Shown here: positions 708 through 47,270 of the stretch, in pieces
Layout: each line of letters starts with the position of its first letter
Position numbering within the stretch: position 1 is the stretch's first letter
Position numbers and translations under genes: made by a program
Assembly (NCBI GenBank): GCA_964035545.1
Contig: OZ037770.1
Location: forward strand, 2,946,662 to 3,010,661
Direction: 5' to 3'
Length of the DNA stretch: 64,000 bases
Source of the DNA: Bugula neritina
Lineage: Eukaryota > Animalia > Bryozoa
The notes under the pieces: generated by a model
The model's database searches: none
The model's input: only the letters and a program-made list of their open reading frames with translations
Told to the model about the DNA's origin: nothing

Positions 708-3700
708 ATGGAGAGCTATAGAGACATTGGGAAGTTGGATGAGTTGACAGAGAAATACCAGAATGAGGCAAGAGATTCAAAGGGTGACTGGGTACCTTAC
801 CTTAAGGTGTGTATAGGTGACTGATTAATTTACATACTTAATACTTGCTACTTGTGATAGGCATGTATAATGAATATAATGAATACTGTGGTATTGTATT
901 TAGGCTCATGGGTTGGCCAACAGATGTCTTGCCAGAGAATGGACCGCAGAAAGACAGCGTAAAGTCTATGATATAGAAGAAAGCTGGTACAAAGGTAGGC
1001 ATCCACTTACATATGAGGAACATGAGCAGCAAACAACCAAACACTTACAGCTACTCAGAGAGTACAGAGATGAAACTAAATATGACTTTAAATCTATTGA
1101 TACAAAGCACTTAAACCTTGACAGTTACCCTTCAAAGGATCAACTGTCTTTCTTTTCTGATACTGTATTTAAACTAAGTCAGAAATGTAGTAACCAATTG
1201 ATTTCAGTCTGTGCGTCCATTATGCAGTCAAGTGTTGATAATCTTAGTAAGTCAGGTTTGGAGGTTCCTTGTTCTTTTGCTGTGATTGCATTGGGTTCTG
1301 TTGCTCGTGGTACAGCCACTCCTTACTCTGACTTAGAATATGCCTTCATTGTGGAGTCTGACAGTCACATGGACTACTTTACTAAATTAGCTGTTGATAG
1401 TTACTTTAGGATAGGGAACATGGGGGAATCTCCCTTGAAAACCTTTGATATTACTGAGATAGACAAGTCCTACAATGATGATGTGACTGTTGGGTTTCAC
1501 ATTGATGGCATATCAAAGAAAGCAGGGAATATCCCTACTGGAAGGGGTGATGGTGCTAAGAACTTGATCTTGATGCCAGATCAGTTAACCTGTGTGTATA
1601 GGGAAGCGTTGTGTTCACCTGCTAGTGACACAGCAGATATTGGTGACATTCTCTCTTCTTCAGTGTTGGTTTATTCCCACAAAAGTGGTGATGCTCTTTT
1701 TGAAACGGTGAAAGAAAATTTTCATAAAATCTTAGCAGAAGAAAGCTCAAGCGCATTGCTAATAAAAAAGCGATTAGCAGTGTTGGGAAATGATGTGAAT
1801 ACGTATAACTTTCAACCTAGTTTTGAGTCTTTTGGGCCTCCAGACAACACCCAGCTTAAAGTAAAGTCTGAATTATTTCGCTACCCAACACTTTTAGTTG
1901 ATCATCTGCGACTGCTCTTAGCTTTCTCTGAAACAAAACCTAGGGCGGTAATTGAGAAACTGAAAGAGTGTGGGTTTATAGATGATGCACAATGTTTCAG
2001 ACTAAACTTAGTATCAGCTTTAGCGATATACATAAGGACAGCAGCTTGTATTCAGCTACAATCTCAACAAGATAAATTTTCACTGTATCCTGCAGCAAAA
2101 TCAAACAGAAAAGTTTACTGCTTATTGCCTGATATTTTCATCCTGATGATCTACACAATTATCCCCTTCAAATTATGTATTGCCAAAAATTTGGTTTCAC
2201 TAACTAGCTTTGACACAACAGATAAGGTTGATGTAATGAAGGGGTTAGTAAGCAATTTAAATGTGCAGAGTTCATCTTTTATGGTAAAAGCTGAAGCTGA
2301 GTATTTCTGTGGATCCTATGAACAGGCAATAAAAACTATTAAAACCAACTGTGGTGAAGGAATATTTGCTGAGAGACCGGATTCATTTGCAAAGACTGTA
2401 AAAAGAATTGTCAAGCAAAACAAATCAGAAACATCAAGGTTATTAAATAGTGGCTCAAAGGAAGTAAAAACTTCTCAGCAACTGGTTGAACTGGCAGCCT
2501 ATTTGTTATACTCTTCACAAAATTTCCAGCTTTCTTTAAAATATTTTACTTGGCTAGCGGAAAATTCTAAAGAAACTTCAATTGATGTGTTGAAGTGGAA
2601 GATTTTGGCCATAGATTGTGCTAACAAACTTCACAACTATACGAATGCATTTTCACTGCTTGGAGATGTTTATTCTACTCTAAAGACTCAGTTTAACATG
2701 AGTAGAGGAGAAACTCCGTTCAGGTTTGTACAAAAAATGTCTACAAGCTGGAAAATTCCAGATGAAGACAAGCGATGGTGTGAAATTACTGCACAAGCTT
2801 TCAGAGTCCTCAGTGAAGCATGTAAAAACACAAAAAACTACATACAAGCAGAGGAAATGGCTAATATTGCGCTCACAGTTTTTGACAGACTGCACTCAGT
2901 TGACAAACAGGAAAGACTTGATAGCCATTACATTGAGCTGATAGTATCATTAGCTTTAATACATTCAGAGAAAGGAGAGCATGAGAGAGGTATTCAGTAT
3001 CTGAATCACTACCTTGATGAGTTGATAAAGCTCCACACTGACTGTGTTGATCACCCAGATGTTGCAATACTACTGAGAGGGTTGGGACTAATCTATGAAA
3101 ATATTGAAGACTCTGAAATGTCCTTGCATTTCTATAGCAGAGCTTTGTCTATGACAGAGAACCTGCACACCACAACTCATCATGGCAGTGTTGCTCAGTG
3201 TTATAGAGATGTGGCAGCTCTGGAAGTCAAAAGGTCAAACTATGATGCAGCACTGAAGAATTATCAAACAGCTAGACACATATATGATAGCATAGAAGCA
3301 GGCAATCATGAAAAAGCTAGTCTACTGGTAGAAGTGGGACTCCTTTACAGTCTTATGGGGGATTATGACTCGGCCCTTTCAAGTCTCAAATCAGCTCTTC
3401 AGATTTCACAGGCTACAGCAGAGACCACCCACATAGACATTGCAGACATACACTCTGCTTATGGTAGAGTATATAGTGAGATGGGAAAGGAAAAGCTTGC
3501 ACTCAAAAATCATGCAATGGCTTTAGAAATGACTAAAAACATATTTAATGAGATAAAGGACATCCCAATACTGGCCCAACTTCATGGAGAAATGGGGAAG
3601 TTTTCTATAGACTTAGGTACTAAGGCTAGACAATTGAATATAGAAAGAGCTAGCAGAGAGGTAAAAAGTGTTCATCCTGATATAGCCTCATGTTATCTTC

Positions 3701-4701
3701 AAGTTGGTAGAGTGTATGAAGATATGTGTCTTTATGATCAGGCCCTGCTTTATATGAACAGGTCATGTGACATGTATATTGCTGTACGTGGGAAGACAAA
3801 TCATGTAGACTTAGCTACTGCTTATGGTGAGCTTGGTAGTGTGTATGACAGCATGGGTGAATATAGCAAGGCACTAGAATACCATACTAAGTCATTAGAT
3901 ATGAAGCTAGCTGTCTATGGCAGTGAGGCTACACATGCACACATTGCTACTTCATATAACAATATTGGTCTTGTGTATGACAGCATGGGTGAATATAGCA
4001 AGGCACTAGAATACCATACTAAGTCATTAGATATGAAGCTAGCTGTCTATGGCAGTGAGGCTACACATGCAGGCATTGCTATTTCATATAGCAATATTGG
4101 TAGTGTGTATGACAACATGGGTGAATATAGCAAGGCACTAGAATACCATACTAAGTCATTAGATATGAGGCTAGCTGTGTATGGCAGTGAGGCTACACAT
4201 GCACACATTGCTATTTCTTATAACAATATTGGTCTTGTGTATCACAACATGGGTGGATATAGCAAGGCACTAGAATACCATACTAAGTCATTAGATATGT
4301 ACATAGCTGTCTATGGCAGTGAGGCTACACATGCACACATTGCTACTTCATATAGCAATATTGGTATTGTGTATGACAGCATGGGTGAATATAGCAAGGC
4401 ACTAGAATACTATACTAAGTCATTAGATATGCGGCTAGCTGTCTATGGCAGTGAGGCTACACATGCACACATTGCTACTTCTTATAGCAATATTGGTATT
4501 GTGTATAACAACTTGGGTGAATATAGCAAGGCACTAGAATACTATACTAAGTCATTAGATATGAAGCTAGTGGTCTATGGCAGTGAGGCTACACATCCTC
4601 ACATTGCTAGTTCTTATAAAAACATCAGTATTGTATATAAGAAAATGGGTGAATATGGAAAAGCACAAGAGTACCAGCTGAAAGCAGATGCTATAAGCTG
4701 A
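708..4701 (+). CDS. Nucleotidyltransferase (Pol-beta superfamily, GlnD/DUF294-like) plus TPR-repeat protein, copy 1; join(708..806,904..4701), ~1298 aa
   Basis: ATG at 708; 33-codon exon ending AAG|gt; acceptor tag at 901-903 in frame with ORF 913..4701. Motif ALGSVARGTATPYSDLEY (GS-x10-DxE), then a helical segment resembling DUF294_C/GlnD (VKSELFRYP..IEKLKECGFID..LAIYIR), then TPRs. Confidence 0.85.
3853..4644 (+). repeat. Six near-identical 132-bp (44-aa) TPR repeats
   Basis: Unit MGEYSKALEYxTKSLDMxLAVYGSEATHAxIAxSYxNIGxVYxx starts at 3853, 3985, 4117, 4249, 4381 and 4513. Confidence 0.95.
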
Positions 4702-5792
4702 GAAGCTGTTCTATATAAGATACCAGTATTTATATACAGGACCTCCCACTCTGTGTGTTACTCATCTCCCTATTAACTAGACTCTAGTCTCTCTCTACAG
4801 AACTCAGACTACTCTCTCTACTATGACTCATCTCTAGAACATTCTGGTATTTTCTAGAAGCTACAGTCTCTCTGTTTCTATACTCATGTTAATAATACAC
4901 TCAGTTTACTCAGGTCAAGTTTATGATGTAGTGTCACAGTAAGTCGTAGTTCAAAGGTCATTTACCAGGTGTATTCCTGTATACAGTCTCTCTCAGAGGG
5001 TATATTGTGGTCTTTCTAACTTCCTCTCCTTGTGAAATATCCAGCTCTGGTTTGTTTGTATATAAGTGCTTCTTCCATAGTCAGAGTTTATTGGTTGTTG
5101 TCTTCTCTCTGTTAAGTGGTCACAACTCCTGAATATCATTATAAACTATTTATAGATTCCATGTAAATATAGGTCAATATACTTTAAGAGTTTTAGCAAG
5201 TGGCCATACATTTGTATATATTATATTTGTGTATATTATGTTTTTATATTTTTCTATTTGTGAAAACCACATTGCATTGCATTCAATAATGTGAATTCTT
5301 TTATATATTAGAATTTTTCACATTTTGTTTTCTTTATTTCGCTGTATGTCAGGCAATTTATTTTATTCACAATTTACTCACCTCTTGTAAATTACTGTGT
5401 ATTTTGCTGTCACTAATTGTACATTTTATTGTATATTACTGTATATTTTGTATCATTTGTCATATTTGACAACATATTGTGTTTACAATATAAACTTTTT
5501 TATTTATTCTTTATTCAAGAATATATTATAAACTCAGAAACATACATTGCATGGCCATCATTTTCTCTTTTATGCTGTACACTCACTGTGTCATATATTT
5601 TTATTAAAGAATATGCAAATGCAGAAACACAATTATTCCAGAGAATTCTTGCTTAAATATGCTCAGTACTAGCTAGTTTTAATATATAATTAAGGCTAGT
5701 TGTTATTGATTGAAAGTTTGACTTTAATATTATTGGGAAACTCCATCATTACATAAGAGTAGAGAATATAAATCAGTGTAACTTCAGTATAA

Positions 5793-6136
5793 GCCTAGGG
5801 CCACACGGCGCGTATTTTCGCATGCGAAAATTGAAATCACAAGTAGCAAAGGTGTCCACTGTGTGCGTTGAGAAAACATTCGCACTTGTCGCTCTGCATT
5901 TTCAACGCAAGTGCGAATCGTCTCTGTCGACGTCACTTAATTGGCTGGTAGTTATTCGGCGAGCCCATTTTCTTTATTTTAGTGCAACATTCCAGTAAAT
6001 TGCGTTTTATTGAAAGCGAGTGCGATTTAAAAATGAAAGCTTTATTTATCACGCATCACTGACGCTACAGTGGACACATTTGCTACTTGTGATTTCAATT
6101 TTCGCATGCGAAAATACGCACCGTTTGGCCCTAGGC
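5793..6136. mobile_element. MITE, PIF/Harbinger (Tourist)-like, 344 bp
   Basis: ~80-bp terminal inverted repeats GCCTAGGGCC...GGCCCTAGGC with TAA on both sides; same family as 56394..56736, in the opposite orientation. Confidence 0.88.
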
Positions 6137-6204
6137 TAACAGTCTATACATAGCGCTGAGACAGTCAACACACACATAAAATAAGATAATTATCCAATCA
6201 ACAT

Positions 6205-6357
6205 CTCTTCCTGTTTATTTTCTCTCCTCTTCCTGTTTATTTTCTCTCTTCTTCCTGTTTATTTTCTCCCCCTTCCTGTTTATTTTCTCCCCTTTTCCTG
6301 TTTATTTTGTCCTTGTTTATTTTCTCTCCTCTTTCTGTTTATTTTCTTCCCTTCTCC
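6205..6357 (+). repeat. Pyrimidine-rich ~21-24-bp tandem repeat (cttcctgtttattttctctcct)
   Basis: About 7 degenerate copies, ending at the junction with the stranded TPR tail. Confidence 0.85.
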
Positions 6358-6358
6358 A

Positions 6359-7024
6359 AAGTCATTACATTATCTCACCTTGTCTCTAGACATGACTAAA
6401 GCTATACATGGTGACAATACCACTCACATAGCTATAGCATACACCTACCATAGACTGGGTAGACTGTATCATAACACAGGTCAATATACACACTCAGTAC
6501 ACTGCTATAACATGGCCCTGGTACAGAGAGATAGGTGTAATACTGCTCATCTCCCTCTATATACAGCTGTGTTAGTCAGTTTCTCTCAGACTATGATCTC
6601 ATTGTCAGACTACAAACACGCTAAGGGTCTCCTACTACTCGCTCTCAAACATTCACCTACTGACTACTGTAAGGATACTCAGGCTAATATCTGTCAATTC
6701 TTAGGATAGTGTTGTCTCCACTTACATCAGTACAGGAAGTGTTGGAAATATTTATATTCAGCTCTCTGTTACTATGAGTCACTTCCTTCCTCCAACTGGA
6801 AGATGAAACTTCTAGCTCAGGTTCATTTGTACATCTCCTACTTGTGCTTACATCTGGGTCATGTTTCACAGGCTATAGAACCTTCTGGGTTAGCCTTAGA
6901 TCTTGTAGAGGTCCTCTCAGTTGACAAGGAGAATGTAACTCCTGAAATTACTAGACTGTATACAGACATTACACACATGACTCTTGGTTTATATTCCACT
7001 CTCACTCTGTATGTTGATGTGTAA
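6359..7024 (+). pseudogene. Stranded C-terminal tail of the NTase-TPR gene
   Basis: KSLHYLTLSLDMTKAIHG...LTLYVDV matches ~39972..40637 of copy 2. ORFs 6380 and 6803 share a frame and are separated by TAG at 6707-6709, where copy 2 has CAG. Confidence 0.9.
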
Positions 7025-8216
7025 TCATACAGTTTCCTTGACTTCTCCTGCCCTAAAATCTTAGGTCAGTGTATATAGTATACCTCAGCTTTGAAGGGCT
7101 TTTGTGTTGAAAATGCGTCTTTTTGAACAATTTTGACTGCTTTTTTAATTTCACACTTTGTATATCATATTTATACTAGCACTTACTATATCTATAAAAT
7201 GTTGAATTGTTTATTTTTGTGTTTCCATTGCATCATCTTATTTTATTCTGAAATTTATATATATTCTTTGTATTCTTGAATATTATATTGATGACATTGT
7301 ATAAATTTTTTTGTAATATATTTAAACTTATGTGTTGTGTGTAACAGGAAAATAAACCAGATGTATATTATAAGAATTGAATAAGCATAATTTGACACCC
7401 TAAAATAACTTCAAATTAAAAACATAAATAAGAAAATTAAAAAAAGGAGTTATCCTCCTTTAGCAGAGAAAACTAAAATACAGCAAATAAATTATTCATT
7501 TAACAGATTACTGGAAATATAAAAAGTTGGTAAATTATTTTGAGTTCTTACAGCATATTCTTGAAATGATTGAACTGTGAAACACTTTCGTTTTGAAACA
7601 ATGCAGAATAAGAGACCCAGTTAGATAGTATTTACTTTACAAAACAAAATATATCCAAGTAATTTTTTAAATTAGCACCAGATATATAAATAATGAAATT
7701 CATTATAAAAAACCATATTAATGCTGCTACTTTCCACAAACAGCAGTCTCTTCTACTGGAGTTGTCGTTCTTTAAAAGCAGAGTCTATTTTCTGTTTCAG
7801 CCATTCATGCATAGTGACAGGGGGGTACTTAGAGCGTCCCACTAGACATTCTATTAGTGTGGTCTGGTCTGGAGTAGCAAAGATGGGATAGAAACTCTGT
7901 CAGCCTCCTGCAGGTGCATGTCATCTGACACCAACACTCGGTGCTTCTGAAAAACATAAACAGTTCTCAGGGAACAAAGAGCATAGTTCATGAAAATACT
8001 GCATTCTACAAATTTTAAGTCAAACTTGACTTTCTTCCATCAGGGTTTTTCTATAAAAATGTAACAAAGCAAAGCATGAATCACATCCACAGCAGAAATA
8101 TTATGTTTATCACATAGACAAGGTTACCAGTAGAGTAGCTCTTCAATTGTGTTCAATTAAATATGCAACAAGCAACATAACCTGGTAGAACTTGCTCGCT
8201 GTGTTTTTTGTAACTA

Positions 8217-8868
8217 TTGGTATTAGTAGTTAGTGTGACATTACTAATTAGTGTGATATACCTAGTTGAGGTGACATTACTAGTTAGTGTGACATCACTA
8301 GTCAGTGTGACATCACTAGTTAGTGTGACATTGCTAGTTAGTGTGACATCACGAGTTAGTGTGACATCACTAGTTAGTGTGACATCACTAGTTAGTAATA
8401 CATCACTAATTAGTGTGACATCACTAGTTAGTATGACATCACTAGTTAGTATGACATCACTAGTCAATGTGACATCACTGGTTAGTGTGACATCACCAGT
8501 TAGTATGACATCACTAGTTAGTATTACATCACTAATTAGTATGACATCACTAGTTAGTGTGACATCACTAGTTAGTATGACATCACTAATTAGTGTGACA
8601 TCACCAGTTAGTGTGACATCACTGGTTAGTATGACATCACCAGTTAGTGTGACATCACTAGTTAGTATGACATCACTAGTTAGTGTGACATCACTAGTTG
8701 GTATGACATCACTAGTTAGTGTGACATCACTGGTTAGTATGACATCACCAGTTAGTGTGACATCACTAGTTAGTATGACATCACTAGTTAGTGTGACATT
8801 ACTAGTTAGTATGACATTACTAGGTAGTGTGTCATCATTAGTTAGTGTGACATCACTAGTTAGTATGA
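8217..8868. repeat. 18-bp minisatellite (gtgacatcactagttagt), ~36 copies, intronic
   Basis: Direct inspection; it generates the spurious VTSLVS/TSDVTL ORFs. Confidence 0.95.
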
Positions 8869-10422
8869 CAGAACAAAGAGCATTTTTAATGTGAAGACAA
8901 ACCCAGTCTAGACTAAAGTTTTCTTGTTTATTTTCTCAATATAACACAACCCAGAACTCAGTCTATAGAATACAGTTGTATGGTAGATTTGATGTGTTTA
9001 TTTTCTCAATATAACACATTGCGGAACTTACATTAGCAACCAGAGTGTCTGACGTCCAGAACTGCATTACATCACCAATATTAACAATAATACCACCAGG
9101 GGGAGCTGTCACTGCCTCATATTCTCCAGTAGATCTATTCATCACCTGGTATAATATAATACACAGATACTACAAGCAGGGAAGATAACTTCTAAATGTT
9201 AGTAAATTAAACTAACAAATATGATAGAATTCAGAGCTCATTGTGTAGAGGTCAGGCACAACTAACTCATACAAGTATTATGTAATACGAACCTCTAGCC
9301 CAGGGCTATCTTGAATCAGTAAAGTAACGGAGCCGTAGTCACTGTGCTCCCAACATCTAACTTGGCCAGGTTCTAAGTCTACATTCACCGAACAAGCAAT
9401 CTTGTTAGCTCATCTGATTGGTTGAATAGGAAGTGATGTCACACTTGAAACTACATTCACACATGCAATATATTGTATACAATACCATAACTAACAGATG
9501 TAACTCTTATCCTTATACTTAGTATTCAAGGAAACATCTCAAGATTCCTACATATACATGATATACTATGTTGATGTTAATATTCTACTAAAATATGGTT
9601 TACTAAAGTAACACTGTCTGTTCTATTATATACACAGAATATACAACTATACTGTTACTCTTAGTATGTATGAATGTGCGTTGTACATACAACCAGTAAA
9701 ATATAGCCTAGGAATCTCATCTTTGCTGAGAGTGGCTGGGTAAAAGTTAACTCGAATAGCCGACTCGTTCTGAGAGGAACCAAAGCTATGAGAATTTGCT
9801 ATATAAGACGGTTCTTTCAGTCTTAGACCTAGGCCCATCAGCTTCATGAACTGCAGTGAGAGGGTAGACAGTCTCCCCCACCATTCCTTGAGAATTTTCA
9901 TAGAATATGGTATTTCCTAGAGAAAGTGTAAAATGTTATTAGCAAAGACTCACTCTTTACATTCTCAGTCTGGAATTTGTTAATTTTTAAAATAATGAAA
10001 CGAAACGATAAAAACTTCAAACAACATTATGCTGGACATTGTGTACAAAAATTATAGATATTCATCACAATACAAAGTGACTATGTCATACATGAAATAT
10101 TTCAATTTACACTCATATTTGCACTAATGTTTAGTACACACTACACACCTGACAATGAAACCATTTTACACTATAAACTCACTGTTTCTGCCATTACTGG
10201 TTGAAAGTTAAAAGTTTCCTTGTAGTCCCCTGCCTTCCTATCAGTAGAGAGAGTTTCTCGTCCAACATCCACCCACCCTGTGTTACTCATCAGTCCCTTT
10301 GTGTACAAACACTTTTCACTCTCTCCCAAACCAAAGAATTACTTTACTCCGTTCATCAATGTGTCCATCTGAAAGTGTGAAGCAGACAAAATAGAGTACA
10401 CTTAAACATTGAAACAATCTTT

Positions 10423-10643
10423 ACCTGTACACATACACTACACAGCAACAGCTAGCACCTGGGAGCATCTATACATATAAGCACTACAAAGCACCTGCTA
10501 GCACCTGAGAGTACATGTACATACACACTACAGAGCACTTGCTAGCACCTGGGAATACCTGCACATATACACACTACAGAGCACTTGCTAGCACCTGGGA
10601 GTACCTGTATATATACACTACAGAGCACTTGCTGACACCTGGA
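10423..10643 (+). repeat. ~44-46-bp minisatellite containing CACYTGCTAGCACCTG, ~5 copies, in oxygenase intron 1
   Basis: gcacctg recurs at 10455, 10501, 10545 and 10591. Confidence 0.85.
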
Positions 10644-11054
10644 GGCATCTTCATACAGTTGAAAGTGACTTCTGCAATGCTGATAGAAATATAAACAAAA
10701 CTAATAAATATTGACAATAAATAGAGAGTTACATACTATATGACATTCTCTCTAATCTGCTTCATATAAACACCTACACAATACTTGTATATTACCTCGT
10801 CTTGAGTTATTCCTGTGTTCACTAGACAGATAAATCCTACAGTCTTTAATGCTGATATTATGTCATCAGCCAGTGATATCTGTTCAGGAGTTATCTTCCA
10901 CAGTAGTGCTGCATCTCCTGGTATTGACTGTCCAGCAGTAAAGTCTATTACAAGCACTATTGGCTTCTCCATGGCACTATCTAAATATCAACAAAGGTAA
11001 ATAAGCTGAGTTGAGTAACTTGGTGGATGAGATACGAAATAAGTTGGCTTGAAC

Positions 11055-11815
11055 TTTATTAATGACATTTTAAACTGCGTTATACATAGTACAATCAGGC
11101 TTTTTGCTGACGACACTCTTGTCTATCTGCCCATTACTAATCCAAATGACAATCATTAACTACAGGAAGATCTTTCTAGACTTTATAGGTGGGCAGAAAA
11201 AAACAATATGAAGTCTAACTCAAAGAAAAGCAATGTCATCAGCTTTGGTAAAAAAACAGAAAACATGAAAAATGTCTTCACTTATAAACTAGGAGATCCC
11301 CTGAATAGAGTTGGAGTTGTAAAATACTTTAAAATATTGTTATCATCAGATTTAAAATGAAATAAGCATGTCGAAAATACAATATCAAAGGCGTACAGGG
11401 TGTTAATCAAGCTCACACCAGGAAATGTCCCAGAAAATGTTAAAATTCTTGCATATAAAACTCTTTGTAGACCTCTCCTGGAATATGCTGCTGAAGTATG
11501 GGACCTGCACAATAAACATCTAATAACAAAATTACAAGTTACTCAAAATAGGGCTGTATGGTTCATTAAAAATCTAAAGGGTAGAGAAGTATCGGTGACA
11601 GATGCCAAATTTGACCTAGGCTTGGAAACATTAAGAAAGCGCAGACAGTCACAAAGAATTTCTTTGTTGTGTCGTATTACTGCTAATGAGGATTTATTTC
11701 CAACCTTAACTAACACTCTTAAATCTATGAAATCCTCAACCCATAACATGAATACCCGTATTAACACCTTCAACGCTATAGCCTGTGATTCGAGCCTGTA
11801 CCTGCAGGATTTTCT
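11055..11815 (+). mobile_element. Degenerate 3' fragment of a non-LTR retrotransposon (CR1/L2/Jockey-group RT)
   Basis: Frameshifted translation gives IRLFADDTLVY, LQEDLSRLYRWA, SDLK*NKHV, KILAYKTLCRPLLEYAAEVWD. Confidence 0.85.
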
Positions 11816-14544
11816 TGCGCACTGTCCGGGAGCTCCATACAGGAGGAGATAGTGGCAGATTTCTGAGCTTGGATAGATCTGAGGGTCCCACAATTACTCT
11901 CTTGGAGAGGTCTTGGGACTTAACCTAATTAAGATCAAGAACTCAAACATGAAATCTTTTCTAAGAAAGTAACAAATACATGAAATAGAGAATTCTTGAA
12001 ATTGAACAAGGTGGATACTCTGCTTAGATACTTGCTTAAACTTAGTGATTAGTTATCATCATTACGCAATAATTATATGCATATTTGTCGTGACACAATA
12101 ACTATAATTGTCATTATGCCTAATGGTATTCATAATACTTAATAGTAATCATCAACATTATCATAATGATAATCATAACGTGAATGTAAAACTGAACTCT
12201 ACACTCAACACTCACAGGTACTTGTTTATGTTAAGACTTTCACTGGTACACTAACAGTAATACTAATACTGCATCACAGAAACACTAACTTACTGACTAA
12301 CAGTAACGGTAACACTACATCCTAGCAACAGTAACTGAGTAAGTCACTAATCACTAATGACTAACTCTAAGTTTAACACTAACACTGTTAGTGTTACACT
12401 TAGTGATTAACTTCAACATACAATCAGTATTACGTCAAATTTAATGCTTATAGCATACGTATTACTATTAGGTATACTACGATCTATAGTATTAGCAATG
12501 ATTATAAGTTATGGTAATGCCCAACTCAAATATCAATATGAATATCGATATTCATTTGAAACATAATGTGAAGGAAACTAGAACAAATGTTGAAAACGGA
12601 ATCAATAGTTTTACCCAATACCGTGAAGTTACCAATGGAACAGCAACCAATTGCAGCGTTACAGTTTTTTCCAAGAAGGCATAACTCGTTTTGTATCCTA
12701 CCATGTGACTGTTTTGTCATAGCCTTGCGACCACTTAATGTGATAAAATTGCCTAATCATTACATTTTGCTAATCGAGACTAATCACCATCCAACTCGCT
12801 AGCCTTGGAAACCTGGCTTTTATTTTTCAATGAATGAAAATGAAAGCCGTTGTCGAAGAGTTAGACTTGTTGAACTAATGTTGAACTTAATGTATTCACA
12901 AAGGAAAAGTTCTTGACAAATGATAGTGTAATATGGAAGATTGTACTTAGTAAATTAGCGTAATAAGTAGGCAATATGTATTTTTGCACTTTTATTTAGT
13001 TAACTTTAGACTAAAGTTTAGTATTTTTTGCACCCAATTCAATGCAATGCAATTGTGAACTGAGTTATAAATATAATTTTATTTTATTTTAAAACTAGAA
13101 GTTTATTCTTAATCTAAATTAAAATATAAATCTATAATCATAGAGATATTTGATAATCATAATGATATTTGATAATCATAATGGTTAATAAAATACTGGT
13201 TTTATTGATTTTGATTATCATTATACTTATAATACTAATACTATTAGTAATAGTAATGATTTATCAGTATCTAGGATGACACCAATGAATAATCATAATG
13301 ATAGTTCATAGTTGTATTTATACTAATGATTATAATATATTTGAAATTAGTATGACTATTACTCACTATAAGTTATTGTGTAAGTAATAATAATAGTAGT
13401 AACACTCGTACTCAATCTCATAGTCGTACTGGTAGCCTACCGCCATACTGACAATGATACTCATACTTATACTATTATTATTACTAAGTCTGGTACTATA
13501 GGACTCCGGTTATTTTGTACACAAGTGGTTTCGTAAACAACAATGTAAATTAACTAAAATACATAATATTTTTGATATGTTTTAAATATTTACTTATTAT
13601 TTAGGTTTAGGGTTGATTCATTATTCATTTTGTCTACAGAAATTTGTGTACAAAATGCCAGGAACCAATGCTATAATACTAATACTGATAGTGATATTAT
13701 TACAATTAGTAAGACTAATACTAATAGCAATGCTATAACTACAGCTAATTAGTAATACACATGTATGCTAATACTAATGGTAATAGGAGTACATTTAGTT
13801 TTATTATACTTATATCCAAAACTAATAGTAGTACTAATAGTAATGCTAATAGTCATAGTGGCGCTTATAACTTAAACTATAACTATAAGTAACAAAAGTT
13901 GTAATTGTTAGTCACAGTGAGTATGGCTGTCCTATGACTTCTATTTTATAATTATATAATATAGACTGTAGAGTTAGGGTTTAAATTTTACTTACACCCA
14001 GGTTTACTAATTAATTTAATTAAAACTAGCTCTATTAGTACTACTATGCATGCATGATAATAATTGTGCTAATAGTCGTAACATCAACTAGTCTTCTGCA
14101 ATAATAATAAATGTTAGTTAATTGACTAGAAGTAAAATAATAATATCAGTTAACTCACTAGAAGTATAGTAATAACTTTAGCTCACGGTTATAACTTCTA
14201 ATTCACAGTATTATCAAATATGTTTTATGATTATTATTTTAAATTATCAAATGTAAAGATAAATTTAAAATTATTGTTACAAACACTCCCAGTCTCATGT
14301 AATAAGAAGCATTGTTCTAAAATTAGACCTTAACTTTTTTATAGCAGCTATGCACTTGATAGTATTGTAGTGCAATAAATCTAACCTCTAAAGACATGTA
14401 AATTGTCAATCATTTTTCATGATCGTTCTAATTTGTATAGTAAATTTATTATTTTTAATAGTATTATTTGTTACAAATTCAATTTGTAGCTACTACTTTA
14501 CTATAAAAAAACTCACGGAAGTTTATAGGTTTTTTGTTAAATAG

Positions 14545-14687
14545 GGCTAAGGAATTATTCAGATGGGGCACAGGAGCAATTATGACTGGCTACTTTTTCT
14601 AACATCATCAATTGTCGTTGTCGGGGTTCAAACCCATGACTTTTTGTTTACTGAGAAAACAGTTTAACCCCTAGACCTCCTAGCTAC
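14545..14687 (-). mobile_element. Possible tRNA-derived SINE remnant
   Basis: Minus strand reads GGTCTAGGGGTTAA (A-box-like) ... GGGTTTGAACCCCG (B-box-like; GGGTTCAAACCC in unit 2). No intact cloverleaf. Confidence 0.45.
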
Positions 14688-18500: not shown

Positions 18501-18689
18501 ATCCAGAACACAGGCTAACTGGAAGAGACCATCTCGTCCACAAGTACCTAGACAGTAGCAAACCTAGCGCGCCATCTCTCACACTAGAGTTATCTTCGCA
18601 TAACAAGTCTACTAGTTCTGTGTACATGCACATAGACATGGATTGCTTCTTTGTCAGCGTTGTGTTGAGGCAGCATCCAGAGTTGAAAG
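15560..18689 (+). CDS. REV1: REV1 5' portion only (BRCT, N-digit, first catalytic motif), ~317 codons; exons 15560..15649, 16419..16545, 17218..17357, 17507..17660, 17997..18072, 18164..18320, 18482..18689
   Basis: Motifs GGYMNAKVQKL, LFENVAIFVNGYTEPS, VTHIVATSL, VVLPSWITDSVK, FVAEFYGNSRLHHLSEW, YMHIDMDCFFVSV..HPELKG. All introns are GT-AG with compatible phases. No further REV1 exons were recognised. Confidence 0.9.
15704..16316. repeat. 26-bp AT-rich minisatellite (ttactagttatatgttatattatata), ~23 copies, in REV1 intron 1
   Basis: Direct inspection; only ~7 copies at 55625..55800. Confidence 0.93.
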
Positions 18690-18702
18690 GTCAGGATGAG
18701 GA

Positions 18703-25284: not shown

Positions 25285-25319
25285 TGACACTGTTTAACAA
25301 GTAGTAATAACGGTAATTT

Positions 25320-34300: not shown

Positions 34301-35227
34301 ATGATTGGATGATATTTGTTGAGCAAATGTTTCCCTGAAATTAAACATTTCTACCTACTATCATATTATACTGCATGTGTTGAGTTTATACTGGTTAGGA
34401 AAATGTAGTCTTGAAAATATATGCAGTCCTCGAACTCATTTCTCTGATGAATATTTTATCAGTTTGAATTAACATATCCTTTGGTTGCTGGTGTTGCTAA
34501 TAATAATACTGTAGACTAACTGGTAGCTGCTATGAAAGTATGACCTTCTTGTTTGTTGAGTTAATTACCAAATCTTTACCTTGTTGGCATACTGATTTAT
34601 GAAATGTTTTGTGAAAATAAATTCATGTAATTCTACTGCTGCTTTTAGACACCACCCAACTAGAAGACACCTGTCAGCACCTGTCATCAGCGCATTACCA
34701 CCAAAGTCTGCCTGTCACAGCCTCACCATATATATATACAGGGCACTACAACACACCTGCTATCACCTGTCACAAAGTTGACTCTACCTCAGTTGACATA
34801 GACCACCCTCCTTTATTAATTTGAAGTAAGTTTCTGATTTTATTCTAATTTTAAAATTTCACAGCTTCGTCAATTGAATTTTGCAATTGCTTTGAAGCAA
34901 AAGAAATGAGAAAAACTTGAATGTAAAACTATTTTAACAGATTAATAAAATTGCAGCATTGACCGTTATTTAGTTTAAGTTTAGATAACTTCACATTGTG
35001 GTGCACATTTTGCTGCTATTTTATATTCTGGTAACCAGCTACGTTTTTATTACAAGTTACTTTTATAAGGAAAGCAATTGATTTATTTTTTAACCAAATT
35101 ATATGCAATTTCTCATAATCTAAACATTATTCTATTCTTTAGGCACTATCACAACAGAACCCACCTGCCCCCACCTGTCACAAAGTATATGACTGCCTGG
35201 CAAATAACACAGCTCTTCAATTATTCA
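28382..35227 (+). other. Array of ~14 paralogous, apparently non-coding exon-like modules with a paired CACCTG core
   Basis: Modules at 28382-28597, 29096-29205, 29502-29596, 29883-29964, 30403-30494, 30908-30983, 31145-31229, 31835-(truncated), 32109-32287, 32514-32599, 33166-33349, 33797-33883, 34649-34825, 35143-35227. Nearly all follow a T-rich tract plus YAG, and most end at GTAAG. Confidence 0.7.
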
Positions 35228-35496: not shown

Positions 35497-38400
35497 ATGG
35501 AGGGCTATAGAGACATTGGGAAGTTGGATGAATTGACAGAGAAATACCAGAATGAGGCAAGAGATTCAAAGGGCGACTGGGTGCCTTACCTTAAGGTATG
35601 TATAGGTGACTAATTAATGTACATACTTATTACTTGAGTCTCAAAATTGTTTGTGATGGGTATGTATAATGAATATAATGAATACTGTGGTATTGTATTT
35701 AGGCTCATGGGTTGGCCAACAGATGTCTTGCCAGAGAATGGACAGCAGAAAGACAGCGTAAAGTCTATGACATAGAGGATAGCTGGTACAAAGGTAGGCA
35801 TCCACTTACATATGAGGAACACAAACAACAAACAACCAAACACTTACAGCTACTCAGAGAGTACAGAGATGAAACTAAATATGACTTTGACTCTATTGAT
35901 ACAAAGCATTTAAACCTTGACAGTTACCCTTCAAAAGATCAACTGTCTTCCTTTTCTGATACTGTATTTAAACTAAGTCAGAAATGTAGTAACCTATTTA
36001 TTTCAGTCTGTGCGTCCATTATGCAGTCAAGTGTTGATAATCTTAGTAAATTAGGTTTGGAGGTTCCTTGTTCTTTTGCTGTGATTGCATTGGGTTCTGT
36101 TGCTCGTGGTACAGCCACTCCTTACTCTGACTTAGAATATGCCTTCATTGTGGAGTCTGACAGTCACATGGACTACTTCACTAAGTTAGCTGTTGATAGC
36201 TACTTTAGGATAGGAAACATGGGAGAATCTCCCTTGAAGTGCTTTGATATTACTGAAATAGACAAGTCCTACAATGACGATGTGACTGTTGGGTTTCACA
36301 TTGATGGCATATCGAAGAAAGCAGGGAATATCCCTACTGGAAGAGGTGATGGTGCTAAGAACTTGATCCTGATGCCAGATCAGTTAACCTGTGTGTATAG
36401 GGAAGCGTTGTGTTCACCTGCTGGTGACACAGCAGATATTGGTGACATTCTCTCTTCTTCAGTGTTGGTTTATTCCCACAAAAGTGGTGATGCTCTTTAT
36501 GAAACAGTGAAAGAAAGTTTTCATAAAATCTTAGCAGAAGAAAGCTCGAGCGCATTGCTAATAAAAAAGCGATTGGCAGTGTTGGAAAATGACGTGAATA
36601 CGTATAACTTCCAACCTAGTTTTGAGTCTTTCGGGCCTCCAGACAACACCCAGCTGAAAGTGAAGTCCGAATTATTTCGATACCCAACACTTTTGGTTGA
36701 TCATCTCCGAATGCTGTTAGGTTTCCCTGAAACAAAACCTTGGTTGGTAAATGAGAAACTGAAAGAATGTGGGTATATAGATGAAACACAATGTTTCAGA
36801 CTAAACCTAGTATCAGCTTTAGCTATATACATAAGGACAGCAGCTTGTATTCAGCTACAATCTCAGCAAGATAAATTTTCACTGTATCCTGCAGTAAAAT
36901 CAAACAGAAAAGTTTATTGCTTATCACCTGATATTTTCATCCTGATGATCTACACAATTGCCCCTTTCAAATTATGTATTGCCAAAAATTTAGTTCCATT
37001 AACTAGTCTTGACACAACAGATAAGGTTGATGTAATGAAGCGTTTAGTAAGCAATTTAAATATGCAGAGTCCATCTTTTATGGTAAAAGCTGAAGCTGAG
37101 TATTTCTGTGGATCCTATAAACAGGCAATAAAAACATTTAAAACCAACTGTGGTGAAGGAGTATTTGCTGAGAGACCTGATTCATTTGCAACACTTGTAA
37201 AAAAAACATCAGAAACATCAAGATTGTTGAGTAGTGGCTCAAAGGAAGTAAAAACTTCTCATCAACTCGTCGAACTGGCAGCCTATTTGTTATATTCTTC
37301 ACAAAATTTCCAGTTTTCTTTAAAATATTTTACTTGGCTAGCAGAAAATTCTAAAGAAACTCCAATTGATGTGTTGAAGTGGAAGATTTTGGCCACAGAT
37401 TGTGCTAACAAACTTCACAGCTATACTGATGCATTTTCACTGCTTGGAGATGTTTACTCTACTCTAAAGACCAAGTTTAACATGAGTAAAGGGCAAACTC
37501 TGTTCAGGTTTGTACAAAAGATGTCTACAAACTGGAAAATTCCAGATGAAGACCAGCGATGGTTTGAAATCACTGCACAAGCTTTCAGAATCCTCAGTGA
37601 AGCATGTAAAAACACAAAAAACTACATACAAGCAGAGGAAATGGCTAATGCTGCCGTCACAGTTTTTGACAGACTGCACTCAGAAGACAAACAGGAAAGA
37701 CTTGATTGCCATTACATTGAGCTGATAGTATCATTAGCTTTAATATATTCAAAGAAAGGAAAGCATGAGACAGGTATACAGTACCTGAATCACTACCTTG
37801 ATGAGTTGATAAAGCTGCACACTGACTGTGTTGATCACCCAGATGTCGCAATACTACTGAGAGGGTTGGGACTAATTTATGAAAATATTGAAGACTATGA
37901 AATGTCTTTGCATTTCTATAGCAGAGCTTTGTATATGACAGAGAACCTGTACACCACAACTGATCATGGCAGTGTTGCTCAGTGTTATAGAGATGTGGCA
38001 GCTCTGGAAGTCAAAAGGTCAAACTATGATGCAGCACTGAAGAATTATCAGACAGCTAGACACATATATGATACTGTAGAGGCAGGCAATCATGAAAAAG
38101 CTAGTCTACTAGTAGAGGTGGGATTCCTTCACAGTCTTATGGGAGATTATGACTCAGCCCTTTCAAGTCTCAGCTCAGCTCTTAAGATTTCACAGGCTAC
38201 AGCAGAGACCACCCACATAGACATTGCAGACATACACTCTGCTTATGGTAGAGTATATAGTGAGATGGGAATGGAAGAGCTTGCACTCAAATATCATGCA
38301 ATGGCTTTAGAAATAACCAAAAACATATTTAATGAGATTAAGGACATCCCAATACTGGCCCAACTTCATGGAGAAATGGGGAAGTTTTCTATAGACTTAG

Positions 38401-40637
38401 GTACTAAGGCTAAACAATTGAATATAGAGAGAGCTAGTAGAGAGGTACAAGGTGCTCATCCTGATATAGCCTCATGTTATCTCCAAGTTGGTAGAGTGTA
38501 TCGAGATATGTGTCTTTATGATCAGGCCCTGCTTTATATGAACAGGTCATGTGACATGTATAGTGCTGTACATGGGAAGAAAAATCATGTAGACTTAGCT
38601 AGTGCTTATGGTGAGCTTGGTACTGTGTATTACAGGATGGGTGAATATAGCAAGGCACTAGAATACTATACTAAGTCATTAGATATGAAGCTAGCTGTCT
38701 ATGGCAGTGAGGCTACACATGCAAGCATTGCTACTTCATATAGCAATATTGGTCTTGTGTATAAGAGCATGGGTGAATATAGCAAGGCACTAGAATACCA
38801 TACTAAGTCACTAGATATGGAGCTAGCTATCTATGGCAGTGAGGCTACACATGCAGACGTTGCTACTTCATATAGCAATATTGGTCTTGTGTATCACAAC
38901 ATGGGTGAATATAGCAAGGCACTAGAATACTCTACTAAGTCATTAGATATGCAGCTAGCTATCTATGGCAGTGAGGCTACACATGCAGACGTTGCTACTT
39001 CATATAGCAATATTGGTCTTGTGTATGACAACCTGGGTGAATATAGCAAGGCACTAGAATACTCTACTAAGTCATTAGATATGCAGCTAGCTGTCTATGG
39101 CAGTGAGGCTACACATGCAAGCATTGCTACTTCTTATAGCAATATTGGTAGTGTGTATGACAGCATGGGTGAATATAGCAAGGCGCTAGAATACTATACT
39201 AAGTCATTAGATATGCAGCTAGCTGTCTATGGCAGTGAGGCTACACATGCAGAAATTGCTACTTCATATAACAATATTGGTAGTGTGTATTACAACATGG
39301 GTGAATATAGCAAGGCACTAGAATACTATACTAAGTCATTAGATATGGATCTAGCTGTCTATGGCAGTGAGGCTACACATTCACACATTGCTACTTCATA
39401 TAGCAATATTGGTAGTGTGTATTACAACATGGGTGAATATAGCAAGGCACTAGAATACTCTACTAAGTCATTAGATATGAGGCTAGCTGTCTATGGCAGT
39501 GAGGCTACACATGCAAGCATTGCTACTTCTTATAGCAATATTGGTAGTGTGTATTACAACATGGGTGAATATAGGAAGGCACTAGAATACTTTACTAAGT
39601 CAATAGATATGAAGCTAGCTATCTATGGCAGTGAGGCTACACATTCAAGTATTGCTACTTCTTATAACAATATTGGTCTTGTGTATAACAACATGGGTGA
39701 ATATAGCAAGGCACTAGAATACTATACTAAGTCATTAGATATGCAGCTAGCTATCTATGGCAGTGAGGCTACACATGCAGACATTGCTTGTAGCTATAGC
39801 AACATAGCCTCAGTTCACCACAAACTCTCAGACTACACCTCATCACTCAATCTCTATACTAAAAGTATAGCCATGTATAAATCAGTCTATGGTGAAGGAA
39901 CCAACCACAATGCTATAGCTGCTAGTTATATAGGTATTGCTGATGTGTACAGAGATACAGGTGAATATGCAAAGTCACTACATTATCTCACCTTGTCTCT
40001 AGACATGACTAAAGCTATACATGGTGACAATACCACTCACATAGCTATAGCATACACCAACCATAGACTGGGTAGACTGTATCATAACACAGGTCAATAT
40101 ACACACTCAGTACACTGCTATAACATGGCCCTGGTACAGATAGATAGGTGTAATACTGCTCATCTCCCTCTATATACAACTGTGTTAGTCAGACTCTCTC
40201 AGACTATGATCTCATTGTCAGACTACAAACACGCTAAGGGTCTCCTACTACTCGCTCTCAAACATTCACCTACTGACTACTGTAAGGATACTCAAGCTAA
40301 AATCTGTCAACTCTTAGGACAGTGTTGTCTCCACTTACATCAGTACAGGAAGTGTTGGAAATATTTATATTCAGCTCTCTGTTACTATGAGTCACTTCCT
40401 TCCTCCAACTGGAAGATGAAATCTTTAGCTCAGGTTCATTTGTACATCTCCTACTTGTGCTTGCATCTGGGTCATGTTTCACAGGCTATAGAACATTCAG
40501 GGCTAGCCTTAGTTCTTGTAGAGGTCCTCTCAGTTGACAAGGAGAATGTAACTCCTGAAATTACTAAACTGTATACAGACATTGCACACATGACTCTTGG
40601 TTTATATTCCACTCTCACTCTGTATGTTGATGTGTAA
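35497..40637 (+). CDS. Nucleotidyltransferase (GlnD/DUF294-like) plus TPR-repeat protein, copy 2; join(35497..35595,35703..40637), ~1677 aa
   Basis: Same exon structure as copy 1; GSVARGTATPYSDLE intact; uninterrupted ORF with 9 conserved TPR units and a divergent TPR tail. Confidence 0.88.
38637..39824 (+). repeat. Nine near-identical 132-bp (44-aa) TPR repeats
   Basis: Same consensus as 3853..4644; 132-bp period from 38637. Confidence 0.95.
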
Positions 40638-47220: not shown

Positions 47221-47221
47221 T

Positions 47222-47240: not shown

Positions 47241-47270
47241 TTCGAATAACTAGTTGCCGAGCGGCACGCA

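What the first reader, a model, noticed from the sequence alone, without database searches (positions are those of the whole stretch)
708..40637. Tandemly arrayed nucleotidyltransferase-TPR genes: candidate diversifying sensor-effector receptor system
Seen: two open paralogs, each with an intact GS-x10-DxE nucleotidyltransferase motif, a helical domain, divergent TPRs and a block of near-identical 44-aa TPRs (6 versus 9 units). No P-loop NACHT/NB-ARC motif was seen. Known: Pol-beta-superfamily NTases include the GlnD/GlnE protein modifiers and the immune enzymes cGAS and OAS; highly conserved but hypervariable TPR/WD40 arrays are the recognition modules of fungal NLR-like non-self receptors. 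Inference: a variable TPR sensor is wired directly to an NMP-transferring effector, as in an innate-immunity or allorecognition receptor family without the usual STAND switch.
Basis: partly seen in the sequence, partly recalled or inferred. Interest (0 to 1): 0.85.

Follow-up and report, generated by a model that had tools for sequence, protein, structure and literature searches.

The report
Bryozoan DrrA-like enzyme fused to variable TPRs
Two neighbouring, transcribed genes of a marine bryozoan each join an enzyme domain shaped like the bacterial protein-AMPylating enzymes DrrA and GlnE to a TPR repeat array that varies on one face of its helices. They belong to a family of at least 60 genes that points to an untested, possibly defensive "bind-and-tag" system in animals.

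Summary
The window carries two paralogous genes (708-4701 and 35497-40637) inside a 34.8 kb tandem segmental duplication. Each has an intact GS-x10-DLE motif, KLC-type TPRs and a block of near-identical 44-aa units (6.4 and 8.9 copies). Correction: gene 1 has lost its C-terminal cap.

The N-terminal 435 residues model with high confidence (pLDDT 91.8). They match DrrA (Z 26.6) and both GlnE domains (Z 22), not cGAS/OAS, and there is no P-loop. Spliced contigs from public runs show transcription.

The genome, Bugula neritina complex, holds at least 60 mostly intact copies with the catalytic motif conserved. The enzyme part is under purifying selection (dN/dS 0.17). Repeat variation sits at the same few helix-face positions in independent paralogs.

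The closest bacterial relatives share the whole NTase+TPR layout and come almost only from obligate intracellular symbionts.

An immune or allorecognition role remains inference: no induction data, no population data, no fused death-fold or TIR domains. Positive selection is not formally shown.

Two earlier follow-ups of this scan reached the same DrrA-like reading on other DNA of this genome.

The parts
403..432 (+). 3' end of a non-coding 5'-UTR exon of gene 1 (donor GT at 433-434); exon start not mapped
   Evidence: Matches, with 3 mismatches, the loose-end sequence that RNA contigs carry upstream of the ATG exon of gene 2. Sequence read.
708..806 (+). Gene 1 coding exon 1 (33 codons, ATG..AAG), followed by the GT..AG intron 807-903
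   Evidence: Sequence. The peptide is conserved upstream of about 20 paralogs.
904..4701 (+). Gene 1 large exon (open frame 913-4701, 1262 aa, stop included)
   Evidence: The frame opens at the splice acceptor with AHGLAN, as in the close paralogs (SHGIAN in one subfamily).
949..2217 (+). Gene 1 DrrA/GlnE-type nucleotidyltransferase domain (ORF residues 13-435: NTase core plus helical subdomain)
   Evidence: AF2 model with pLDDT 91.8. VIA-align: DrrA Z 26.6, GlnE domains Z 22.5 and 21.9. Foldseek gives the same top hits.
1294..1338 (+). Gene 1 catalytic motif GSVARGTATPYSDLE (G128, S129, D140, E142); candidate third carboxylate D198 at 1504-1506
   Evidence: It aligns to the DrrA G-x11-D110-x-D112 motif. 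These columns are invariant or nearly so in 59 homologues and in 29 of 30 paralogs.
2272..3832 (+). Gene 1 TPR-like helical linker (residues 454-608) and divergent KLC-type TPRs
   Evidence: Fold matches to TPR proteins over residues 454-608. Pfam TPR_12/TPR_10.
3833..4676 (+). Gene 1 block of 6.4 near-identical 44-aa TPR units
   Evidence: TRF period 132, 91% matches. Unit alignment.
4702..6356 (+). Sequence that replaces the C-terminal part of gene 1. It holds a MITE-like element of about 350 bp at about 5790-6142.
   Evidence: No homology to gene 2. It is shared at 84% and 80% with the tails of two other short local paralogs. The 350-bp part has 71-bp inverted ends and more than 850 first-look candidates in the genome.
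6356..7021 (+). Orphaned remnant of the C-terminal TPR cap of gene 1 (94% identical to the last 222 aa of gene 2; in-frame stop at 6707-6709)
   Evidence: tblastn.
35198..35227 (+). 3' end of the 5'-UTR exon of gene 2 (donor GT at 35228-35229)
   Evidence: Loose ends of contigs in X2, X4 and X7 upstream of 35487 match this place with 1 mismatch.
35497..35595 (+). Gene 2 coding exon 1 (33 codons), followed by the GT..AG intron 35596-35702
   Evidence: Sequence. A spliced joint at exactly this junction is seen in contigs of runs X1 and X7, and as a loose end in X4.
35703..40637 (+). Gene 2 large exon (open frame 35712-40637, 1641 aa). NTase domain 35748-37016, motif 36093-36137.
   Evidence: Contigs of four studies cover it.
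38617..39788 (+). Gene 2 block of 8.9 near-identical 44-aa TPR units
   Evidence: TRF period 132, 92% matches. Unit alignment. Helix-turn-helix periodicity in the model.
39789..40637 (+). Gene 2 C-terminal degenerate KLC-like TPR cap (lost from gene 1)
   Evidence: Weak sequence matches to kinesin light chain and consensus TPRs. All-helical in the model, at low confidence.
1..22874 (.). Copy 1 of the 34.8 kb segmental duplication that carries the genes (copy 2 = 34789-61962)
   Evidence: Self-BLAST: collinear blocks at 90-98% identity.

Best explanation
These are two members of a family of at least 60 cytosolic proteins in a bugulid bryozoan (Bugula neritina complex).

Shown here:
- Each protein has a DrrA/GlnE/DUF294-type nucleotidyltransferase domain with an intact metal-binding and catalytic motif.
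- That domain is followed by a TPR solenoid. Its central 44-aa units are kept nearly identical, except on one face of helix A and one face of helix B.
- The genes are spliced and transcribed.
- The enzyme part is under purifying selection.
- The number and order of repeat units turn over between copies.

Inferred mechanism:
- The variable TPR groove binds a protein partner.
- The attached enzyme transfers a nucleoside monophosphate, most likely AMP from ATP, onto a hydroxyl of that partner, probably a tyrosine. DrrA does this to Rab1 and GlnE to glutamine synthetase.
- Each paralog would therefore tag a different target.

The lineage-specific expansion, the clustering and the kinship with effector-like proteins of intracellular bacteria make non-self proteins (microbial, symbiont or allogeneic) the most likely class of target. 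This last step is the least secure.
For: Fold:
- The AF2 model of residues 1-620 has pLDDT 91.8 and pTM 0.92.
- VIA-align gives DrrA 6yx5_B Z 26.6 with 320 of 339 residues aligned, GlnE N-domain Z 22.5 and GlnE adenylylation domain Z 21.9. The next unrelated hits are at Z 9 or less.
- Foldseek gives the same four top hits.
- A sequence profile finds DrrA at E 4.8e-6, with SDLE aligned to DrrA's SDLD (D110, D112).

Catalytic residues:
- G128 and D140 are invariant, and S129, E142 and D198 nearly so, in 59 homologues.
- The motif is kept in 29 of 30 paralogs.

Selection, gene 1 against gene 2: dN/dS is 0.17 on the enzyme part and 0.38-0.46 on the TPRs, with dS 0.14.

Transcription: the exon1-exon2 joint with GT..AG ends is present in contigs of two studies. 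Exon-only coverage is seen in three of four runs.

Family:
- 66 matches in the genome, most with open frames of 900-2267 aa, lying in clusters.
- A conserved exon 1 and intron position.

Repeats:
- 22 of 44 positions are invariant among 15 units. The variable positions are 5, 9, 12, 13, 24, 31 and 43.
- The same positions carry pN 0.33 against 0.06 elsewhere in 67 units of 21 other paralogs. None of 200000 random position sets reaches this.
- The positions follow i/i+3/i+4 spacing within the two helices.
- Minimum changes by codon position are 23/12/14 in the repeats; the gene 1/gene 2 differences in the enzyme part are 20/14/46. Fisher p = 0.002.
- Internal units show no positional orthology between the two genes.

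Bacterial relatives: all six that were checked have the same NTase+TPR layout. They come from Rickettsiales, Holosporaceae, Chlamydiae, Amoebophilaceae and similar intracellular bacteria.

Known precedents:
- DrrA and GS-ATase are tyrosine AMPylases with a G-x11-[DE]-x-[DE] motif (PMC8097203).
- FICD is a precedent for a TPR-bearing AMPylase (PMC8097203).
Against: - No enzymatic activity, substrate or ligand is known for any member, bacterial ones included.
- The fold matches GlnE's deadenylylating N-domain as well as its adenylylating domain, so the direction of the reaction and the nucleotide are open.
- At the hypervariable codons of independent paralogs pN/pS is only 1.18. Drift at unconstrained surface positions would explain that as well.
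- No Death, TIR or CARD domain is fused in bryozoan or amphioxus members.
- Contigs cannot show expression level or induction.
- That the variable face is the concave groove follows from general TPR geometry and secondary structure. It was not measured on coordinates.
Confidence: 0.5

Rival explanations
1. Sensor-switch receptor. The TPR array binds a non-self ligand, and this releases the NTase. The NTase then modifies a common host signalling protein, or itself, to start an immune or allorecognition response. It would be an NLR analogue without a STAND switch.
For: - The repeat behaviour matches fungal NLR TPR/WD/ANK arrays: high internal conservation, variation at a few groove positions and differences in repeat number (PMC4986451).
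- Lineage-specific clustered expansion.
- The enzyme part is conserved across all paralogs.
- The host is colonial, and allorecognition matters to colonial animals (general knowledge).
Against: - No switch, oligomerisation or death-fold domain is present.
- No evidence of autoinhibition.
- No induction or polymorphism data.
- In the characterised relatives DrrA and GlnE the enzyme modifies its bound substrate directly (PMC8097203).
Confidence: 0.2
2. Ordinary regulatory or housekeeping enzymes with a scaffold. The TPRs mediate assembly or localisation. The 'hypervariable' positions are simply unconstrained surface residues in arrays that unequal crossing-over keeps alike. The copy number reflects segmental duplication without any recognition function.
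For: - pN/pS is near 1 at the variable codons in independent paralogs (1.18), and 1.02 over the whole unit.
- Variable nucleotide columns in the repeats do not differ significantly from an even spread over codon positions (p = 0.29).
- The genes sit in a large segmental duplication rich in satellites and transposons.
- One copy has lost its C-terminal cap.
Against: - Nearly all of about 60 copies keep long open frames and the catalytic motif.
- Variation recurs at the same helix-face positions in subfamilies that are only 35-54% identical in the enzyme domain.
- In the two window genes pN exceeds pS over the whole unit (0.096 against 0.060).
- A housekeeping function rarely needs 60 diverging copies.
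Confidence: 0.2
3. The domain removes rather than adds a nucleotide, like the GlnE N-terminal deadenylylase or the uridylyl-removing side of GlnD. Alternatively it nucleotidylates a small molecule or a nucleic acid.
For: The GlnE deadenylylation domain (1v4a, Z 22.5) matches as well as the adenylylation domain (3k7d, Z 21.9). DUF294 has no assigned reaction.
Against: The best match by far, in both sequence and fold, is the transferase DrrA. A fused protein-binding TPR array argues for a protein substrate.
Confidence: 0.07
4. A cGAS/OAS-like synthase of a nucleotide second messenger, activated by the TPR sensor.
For: It shares the Pol-beta NTase superfamily motif.
Against: No Mab-21 or OAS Pfam hit. 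No cGAS, OAS or CD-NTase structure appears among the top 50 Foldseek or VIA-align matches, whereas DrrA and GlnE stand far above the rest.
Confidence: 0.03

Closest known systems
Legionella pneumophila DrrA/SidM adenylyltransferase domain (PDB 6yx5, 3nku)
   Same: Best sequence-profile and fold match. It covers the NTase core plus the helical subdomain (320 of 339 residues aligned, Z 26.6). The G-x11-D-x-[DE] motif aligns residue for residue.
   Different: About 15% sequence identity. DrrA continues into a Rab GEF domain and a PI4P-binding domain, not TPRs, and is a secreted bacterial effector. The second motif acid is Glu here and Asp in DrrA.
E. coli GlnE (glutamine synthetase adenylyltransferase) and the GlnD/DUF294 (PF03445) family
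   Same: Same fold, with Z 22.5 and 21.9. The Pfam DUF294 hit is above the gathering score. Databases already label a Bugula and an amphioxus member 'Protein-PII uridylyltransferase N-terminal domain-containing'.
   Different: One NTase domain only. There are no HD or ACT domains (GlnD) and no second NTase domain (GlnE). The protein is fused to TPRs, is eukaryotic with introns and belongs to a multigene family.
F-box/DUF294/TPR 'NEX2' family of Neochlamydia, and like proteins of Rickettsiales, Holosporaceae, Amoebophilaceae and other intracellular bacteria
   Same: The whole NTase + KLC-type TPR layout and the TPYSD[LI]E motif. These families are also expanded within genomes (PMC4209131).
   Different: 22-29% identity in most (up to 39% over short segments). 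Many bacterial members add F-box, OTU or UIM modules. They have no introns. Their function is equally unknown. The tree does not resolve who gave the gene to whom.
Fungal NLR repeat domains with high internal conservation (HET-E/NWD WD40, TPR and ANK arrays)
   Same: Near-identical repeats, variation confined to a few positions of the binding face, differences in repeat number, and unit shuffling (PMC4986451).
   Different: No NACHT/NB-ARC NOD module and no HET-, TIR- or PNP-type effector. The effector here is an NTase placed N-terminally. Allelic polymorphism was not examined.
FICD/HYPE, the metazoan TPR-Fic AMPylase
   Same: An animal protein that combines TPRs with a protein-AMPylating domain (PMC8097203). 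It is a functional analogy for TPR-guided AMPylation.
   Different: An unrelated catalytic fold (Fic). It has two TPRs, is a single-copy gene and is ER-resident with one main substrate, BiP.

Membership tests
Pol-beta-fold nucleotidyltransferase superfamily | hG[GS]-x9-13-Dh[DE]h motif on a strand-helix-strand element | tested here: met
   LGSVARGTATPYSDLEYAFIV at residues 127-147. Strands at 122-127 and 141-147 flank a short helix at 129-132 in the model.
Pol-beta-fold nucleotidyltransferase superfamily | A third conserved carboxylate on a following strand | tested here: inconclusive
   D198 (GFHIDG) is at least 90% conserved in 59 homologues and lies at a beta-bridge in the model.
DrrA/GlnE-type protein adenylyltransferases (incl. 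Pfam DUF294 PF03445 / SidM_N PF20879) | NTase core followed by the GlnE/DUF294_C-type helical subdomain | tested here: met
   VIA-align Z 26.6, 22.5 and 21.9 over model residues 13-435. Foldseek E 2.6e-6 to 3.8e-4. Pfam DUF294 27.6 and 24.8 bits against a cut-off of 21.
DrrA/GlnE-type protein adenylyltransferases (incl. Pfam DUF294 PF03445 / SidM_N PF20879) | Transfer of AMP (or UMP) to a protein tyrosine | not testable with these tools
   Needs a biochemical assay.
cGAS/OAS/Mab-21 (CD-NTase-like) messenger synthases | Mab-21/OAS-type fold and family profile | tested here: not met
   No such Pfam hit. None appears among the top 50 structural matches.
NLR/STAND receptors | Central P-loop NTPase (NACHT or NB-ARC) | tested here: not met
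   No Walker A motif. No NACHT or NB-ARC Pfam hit. The stretch between the NTase and the TPRs (residues 454-608) folds as TPR-like helices.
Repeat arrays with high internal conservation and hypervariable sites (as in fungal NLRs) | Adjacent units at least about 85% identical, with variation focused on a few positions | tested here: met
   Units are 91-92% identical at the DNA level. Such blocks occur in 26 of 29 paralogs. The same variable positions recur.
Repeat arrays with high internal conservation and hypervariable sites (as in fungal NLRs) | Positive selection at those sites, and repeat-number polymorphism between individuals | tested here: inconclusive
   pN/pS is 1.6 over the whole unit in the window genes but 1.18 at the variable sites in independent paralogs. 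No population data. Repeat number differs between paralogs (6.4 against 8.9 copies).
Neochlamydia NEX2-type F-box/DUF294/TPR proteins | DUF294 domain followed by C-terminal TPRs | tested here: met
   PMC4209131.
Neochlamydia NEX2-type F-box/DUF294/TPR proteins | N-terminal F-box | tested here: not met
   No F-box hit in either window protein. Exon 1 encodes only 33 residues.

The most novel reading that the evidence does not exclude
Animals (bryozoans, amphioxus, an octocoral) have an NLR-independent family of intracellular recognition proteins. In it a rapidly reshuffled TPR groove aims a DrrA-type AMPylase at foreign or allogeneic proteins. The module is shared with the effector arsenals of obligate intracellular bacteria and has probably been exchanged with them, so host and symbiont would be using the same weapon against each other.
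Probability: 0.3. Interest if true: 0.85.

Novelty: new variant of a known kind. Interest (0 to 1): 0.65.

Why it matters
A 2021 review of AMPylation in metazoans lists only FICD and SelO as eukaryotic AMPylases and treats the DrrA and GS-ATase class as bacterial (PMC8097203). I found no paper on an animal DrrA/GlnE-type family.

If these proteins are active, they add a third AMPylase class to animals. It would come as a multigene family built for diversification, which would be a new logic for innate recognition: bind and covalently tag, with no STAND switch.

The shared architecture with proteins of Rickettsiales, Chlamydiae, Holosporaceae and Amoebophilaceae also bears on gene exchange between hosts and intracellular bacteria. 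It offers a way into the equally uncharacterised bacterial family.

The hypothesis can be tested directly with a standard in-vitro nucleotidylation assay and a motif mutant.

Tried and rejected
Paralogs outside the window were therefore analysed only over the roughly 1100 residues held in loci L001-L030. Their total repeat counts are unknown.
- cGAS/OAS and NACHT readings: rejected on Pfam, fold and motif evidence.
- Bacterial contamination or dead horizontally transferred DNA: rejected. The genes have host-like GC and conserved spliced introns. They are embedded in host satellites and transposons. dN/dS is 0.17.
- Death, TIR or CARD domains in the N-terminal extensions of amphioxus and Watersipora relatives: none. 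Only further TPRs, or fused tandem gene models.
- Direction of transfer: the quick ML tree gives bryozoans as one clade and amphioxus plus octocoral as another, but their position relative to the bacterial clades is an open fork, and there is no root.
- Single-sequence AF2 model of the TPR half of gene 2: mean pLDDT is only 62. It was used for helix boundaries in the repeat block only, not for fold searches.
- Literature: searches for DUF294, DrrA-like/GlnE-like terms, and Bugula or amphioxus with TPR or uridylyltransferase found nothing on the animal family.
- Spliced protein: it was not built or searched. Exon 2 was searched by reference, and exon 1 was handled on its own.

Full report
**What is there**

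The window has low GC (about 33%) and few ORFs, so it looks eukaryotic. Two long open frames lie on the + strand: 913-4701 (1262 aa) and 35712-40637 (1641 aa).

Each frame opens exactly at a splice acceptor, with the residues AHGLAN. About 100 bp upstream lies a 33-codon exon that starts with ATG: 708-806 in gene 1 and 35497-35595 in gene 2. Each ATG exon ends AAG|GT.

A further non-coding exon ends at 432 in gene 1 and at 35227 in gene 2.

Exon 2 was always given by reference, and exon 1 was handled on its own.

**The array is a segmental duplication**

Self-comparison shows that 1-22874 and 34789-61962 are collinear copies. Their blocks are 90-98% identical, and the copies start 34.8 kb apart. 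The space between the genes is filled with satellites of 18, 26, 31, 35 and 46 bp units.

Copy 2 carries a 6.5 kb GC-rich LTR retrotransposon at 46681-53179. I only observed this element. I built no consensus and attempted no repair.

In the whole genome, three more copies at 89-92% identity lie within 245 kb on the same contig. Three of the four neighbours are in direct orientation, 33-44 kb apart, and one is inverted.

**Gene 1 is truncated**

After 4676, gene 1 runs into 1.65 kb of sequence that is unrelated to gene 2, and its frame stops at 4701. The counterpart of gene 2's last 222 residues sits at 6356-7021. It is 94% identical but has an in-frame stop at 6707-6709.

The replacing sequence is shared, at 84% and 80%, with the tails of the two other short local paralogs. 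The short form therefore arose before later duplications and has kept its open frame. It also holds a MITE-like element of about 350 bp with 71-bp inverted ends, which has hundreds of copies in the genome.

**The enzyme domain**

- Pfam gives DUF294 above its cut-off for both proteins, and a weak SidM_N hit.
- A profile of 59 homologues finds DrrA in the PDB at E 4.8e-6. In that alignment SDLE lies on DrrA's SDLD, which holds D110 and D112.
- The AlphaFold model of residues 1-620 is confident, with pLDDT 91.8 and pTM 0.92.
- VIA-align against 48161 chains gives DrrA at Z 26.6 (320 of 339 residues aligned, model residues 13-435). GlnE's N-terminal domain scores Z 22.5 and GlnE's adenylylation domain Z 21.9. 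Everything unrelated scores Z 9.5 or less.
- Foldseek gives the same top hits.
- No cGAS, OAS or CD-NTase structure appears in either list.
- Residues 454-608 fold as TPR-like helices, not as a NOD. Neither protein has a Walker A motif.
- G128 and D140 are invariant, and S129, E142 and D198 nearly so, across the 59 homologues. The motif LGSVARG[TE]ATPYSDLE is kept in 29 of 30 paralog loci.

DrrA and GS-ATase are tyrosine AMPylases that use a G-x11-[DE]-x-[DE] motif (PMC8097203).

**Real, expressed animal genes**

One paralog (locus L028) is 95.9% identical to Bugula neritina protein KAF6023605.1. The closest other named proteins are from the bryozoan Watersipora subatra. The genome size of 216 Mb is consistent with this. 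I take the organism to be B. neritina or a sibling species.

I laid contigs of four public runs, from four studies, on 35300-38600 (3301 letters).

- A joint skipping exactly 35596-35702 with GT..AG ends is present in runs X1 and X7. Run X4 shows the same junction as a loose end.
- In X2, X4 and X7 the exons are covered but 35300-35410 is not.
- Loose ends link the ATG exon to the upstream UTR exon.

Because these are contigs, they show neither expression level nor induction. At 92% likeness, close paralogs may also contribute.

**Family and selection**

The 620-residue N-terminal query finds 66 places in the genome. Most have open frames of 900-2267 aa. They cluster on C6, C5, C2 and C7.

Exon 1 and the intron position are conserved in about 20 paralogs.

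Between gene 1 and gene 2, dS is 0.14. dN/dS is 0.17 for the enzyme part and 0.38-0.46 for the TPR parts.

**The repeats**

Among the 15 units of the two genes, 22 of 44 positions never vary. Positions 5, 9, 12, 13, 24, 31 and 43 are the most variable. Over the whole unit pN is 0.096 and pS is 0.060.

I then fixed those seven positions in advance and scored 67 units from 21 other paralogs.

- The seven positions carry pN 0.33, against 0.06 elsewhere.
- No random set of seven positions, out of 200000, reaches that value.
- pN/pS at the seven positions is only 1.18.

Minimum changes by codon position are 23/12/14 in the repeats; the gene 1/gene 2 differences in the enzyme region are 20/14/46. 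Fisher's test gives p = 0.002. On their own, however, the repeat counts do not differ from an even spread (p = 0.29).

Near-identical 44-aa blocks occur in 26 of 29 paralogs examined. Scaffold residues are specific to each subfamily, while the variable positions are shared across subfamilies.

Only the first unit of gene 1 and gene 2 is orthologous. The internal units are as alike between the genes as within them, at about 92%. Units have therefore been reshuffled since the duplication.

In the repeat-block model, which has moderate confidence, each unit is a pair of roughly 18-residue helices. Positions 43, 2, 5, 9 and 12/13 follow i+3/i+4 spacing on helix A. Positions 24, 28 and 31 do the same on helix B. 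That this face is the concave groove follows from general TPR geometry. It also fits the fungal NLR precedent, which was modelled on kinesin light chain (PMC4986451). I did not measure it.

**Relatives**

HMMER against 1.84 billion cluster representatives finds 810 proteins at E up to 0.001. The named animal members are from Bugula, Watersipora, Branchiostoma and the octocoral Dendronephthya.

A motif-seeded scan of prokaryotic genomes returned 46 loci. Nearly all come from obligate intracellular bacteria: Rickettsia, Tisiphia, Megaera, Holosporaceae, Amoebophilaceae/Cytophagales, Chlamydiae and a gammaproteobacterial MAG. Several copies per genome are common.

All six that I checked have DUF294 or SidM_N followed by TPR_12 repeats, and some also have an F-box or UIM. 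The Neochlamydia version is the published NEX2 family (PMC4209131).

In a quick ML tree the bryozoan sequences form one clade (support 100). Amphioxus forms another (support 98), with the octocoral beside it. Their position relative to the bacterial clades is unresolved.

The N-terminal extensions of amphioxus proteins hold no death-fold or TIR domain.

**Reading**

Shown:
- a conserved, probably active DrrA/GlnE-type NTase fused to a TPR solenoid;
- repeat units that are homogenised except on one face of each helix;
- high copy number, clustering, unit turnover and transcription.

Inferred:
- the groove selects a protein, and the enzyme nucleotidylates it;
- the targets are non-self.

The scaffold/drift rival remains open, because pN/pS at the variable sites is close to 1 in independent paralogs. 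The sensor-switch version lacks any sign of a switch.

Earlier follow-ups of this scan, on other members of the family in this genome, reached the same DrrA-like reading. My fold, family-count and transcription results agree with them and were obtained independently.

Noticed in passing
window 46681-53179: A GC-rich (58-61%) Ty3/gypsy-type LTR retrotransposon is inserted in copy 2 of the duplication. Its LTRs (46681-47220 and 52624-53179) are 96.6% identical. ORFs for gag(?), protease-RT and integrase are present, and the integrase is split over two overlapping frames. I only observed it.
   Followed up: partly
window about 5790-6142: A MITE-like element of about 350 bp with 71-bp terminal inverted repeats. 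It has more than 850 first-look candidates across all large contigs, at 95-97% identity, which suggests recent mobility.
   Followed up: partly
window 18703-21062 and 59057-60138; 8227-8870 and 41864-42306; 15696-16307 and 55618-55801; 26891-27609: Large tandem satellite arrays (31-bp unit x76 and x35; 18-bp x36 and x25; 26-bp; 35-bp) fill the space between the genes. Their copy number differs between the two copies of the duplication.
   Followed up: no
window 10469-14528 vs 43855-54402: Some non-coding blocks of the duplication are 96-98% identical, which is more alike than synonymous sites of the two genes (dS 0.14). This may reflect uneven gene conversion, or exchange of the coding parts with other paralogs.
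   Followed up: no
window 35558-35696 (joint with 27 inserted letters): Contigs in runs X1 and X2 carry a variant junction in which 27 other letters replace the end of exon 1 and the intron. This is probably a transcript of a close paralog with a different exon 1 end.
   Followed up: no
L041, L061, L065-L067, L072 (gammaproteobacterial MAG OZ257147/8) and L048-L071 (Cytophagales MAG OY970075): Single bacterial genomes carry 7-9 copies of the NTase-TPR gene, some nearly identical. The bacterial family therefore also expands within lineages.
   Followed up: partly
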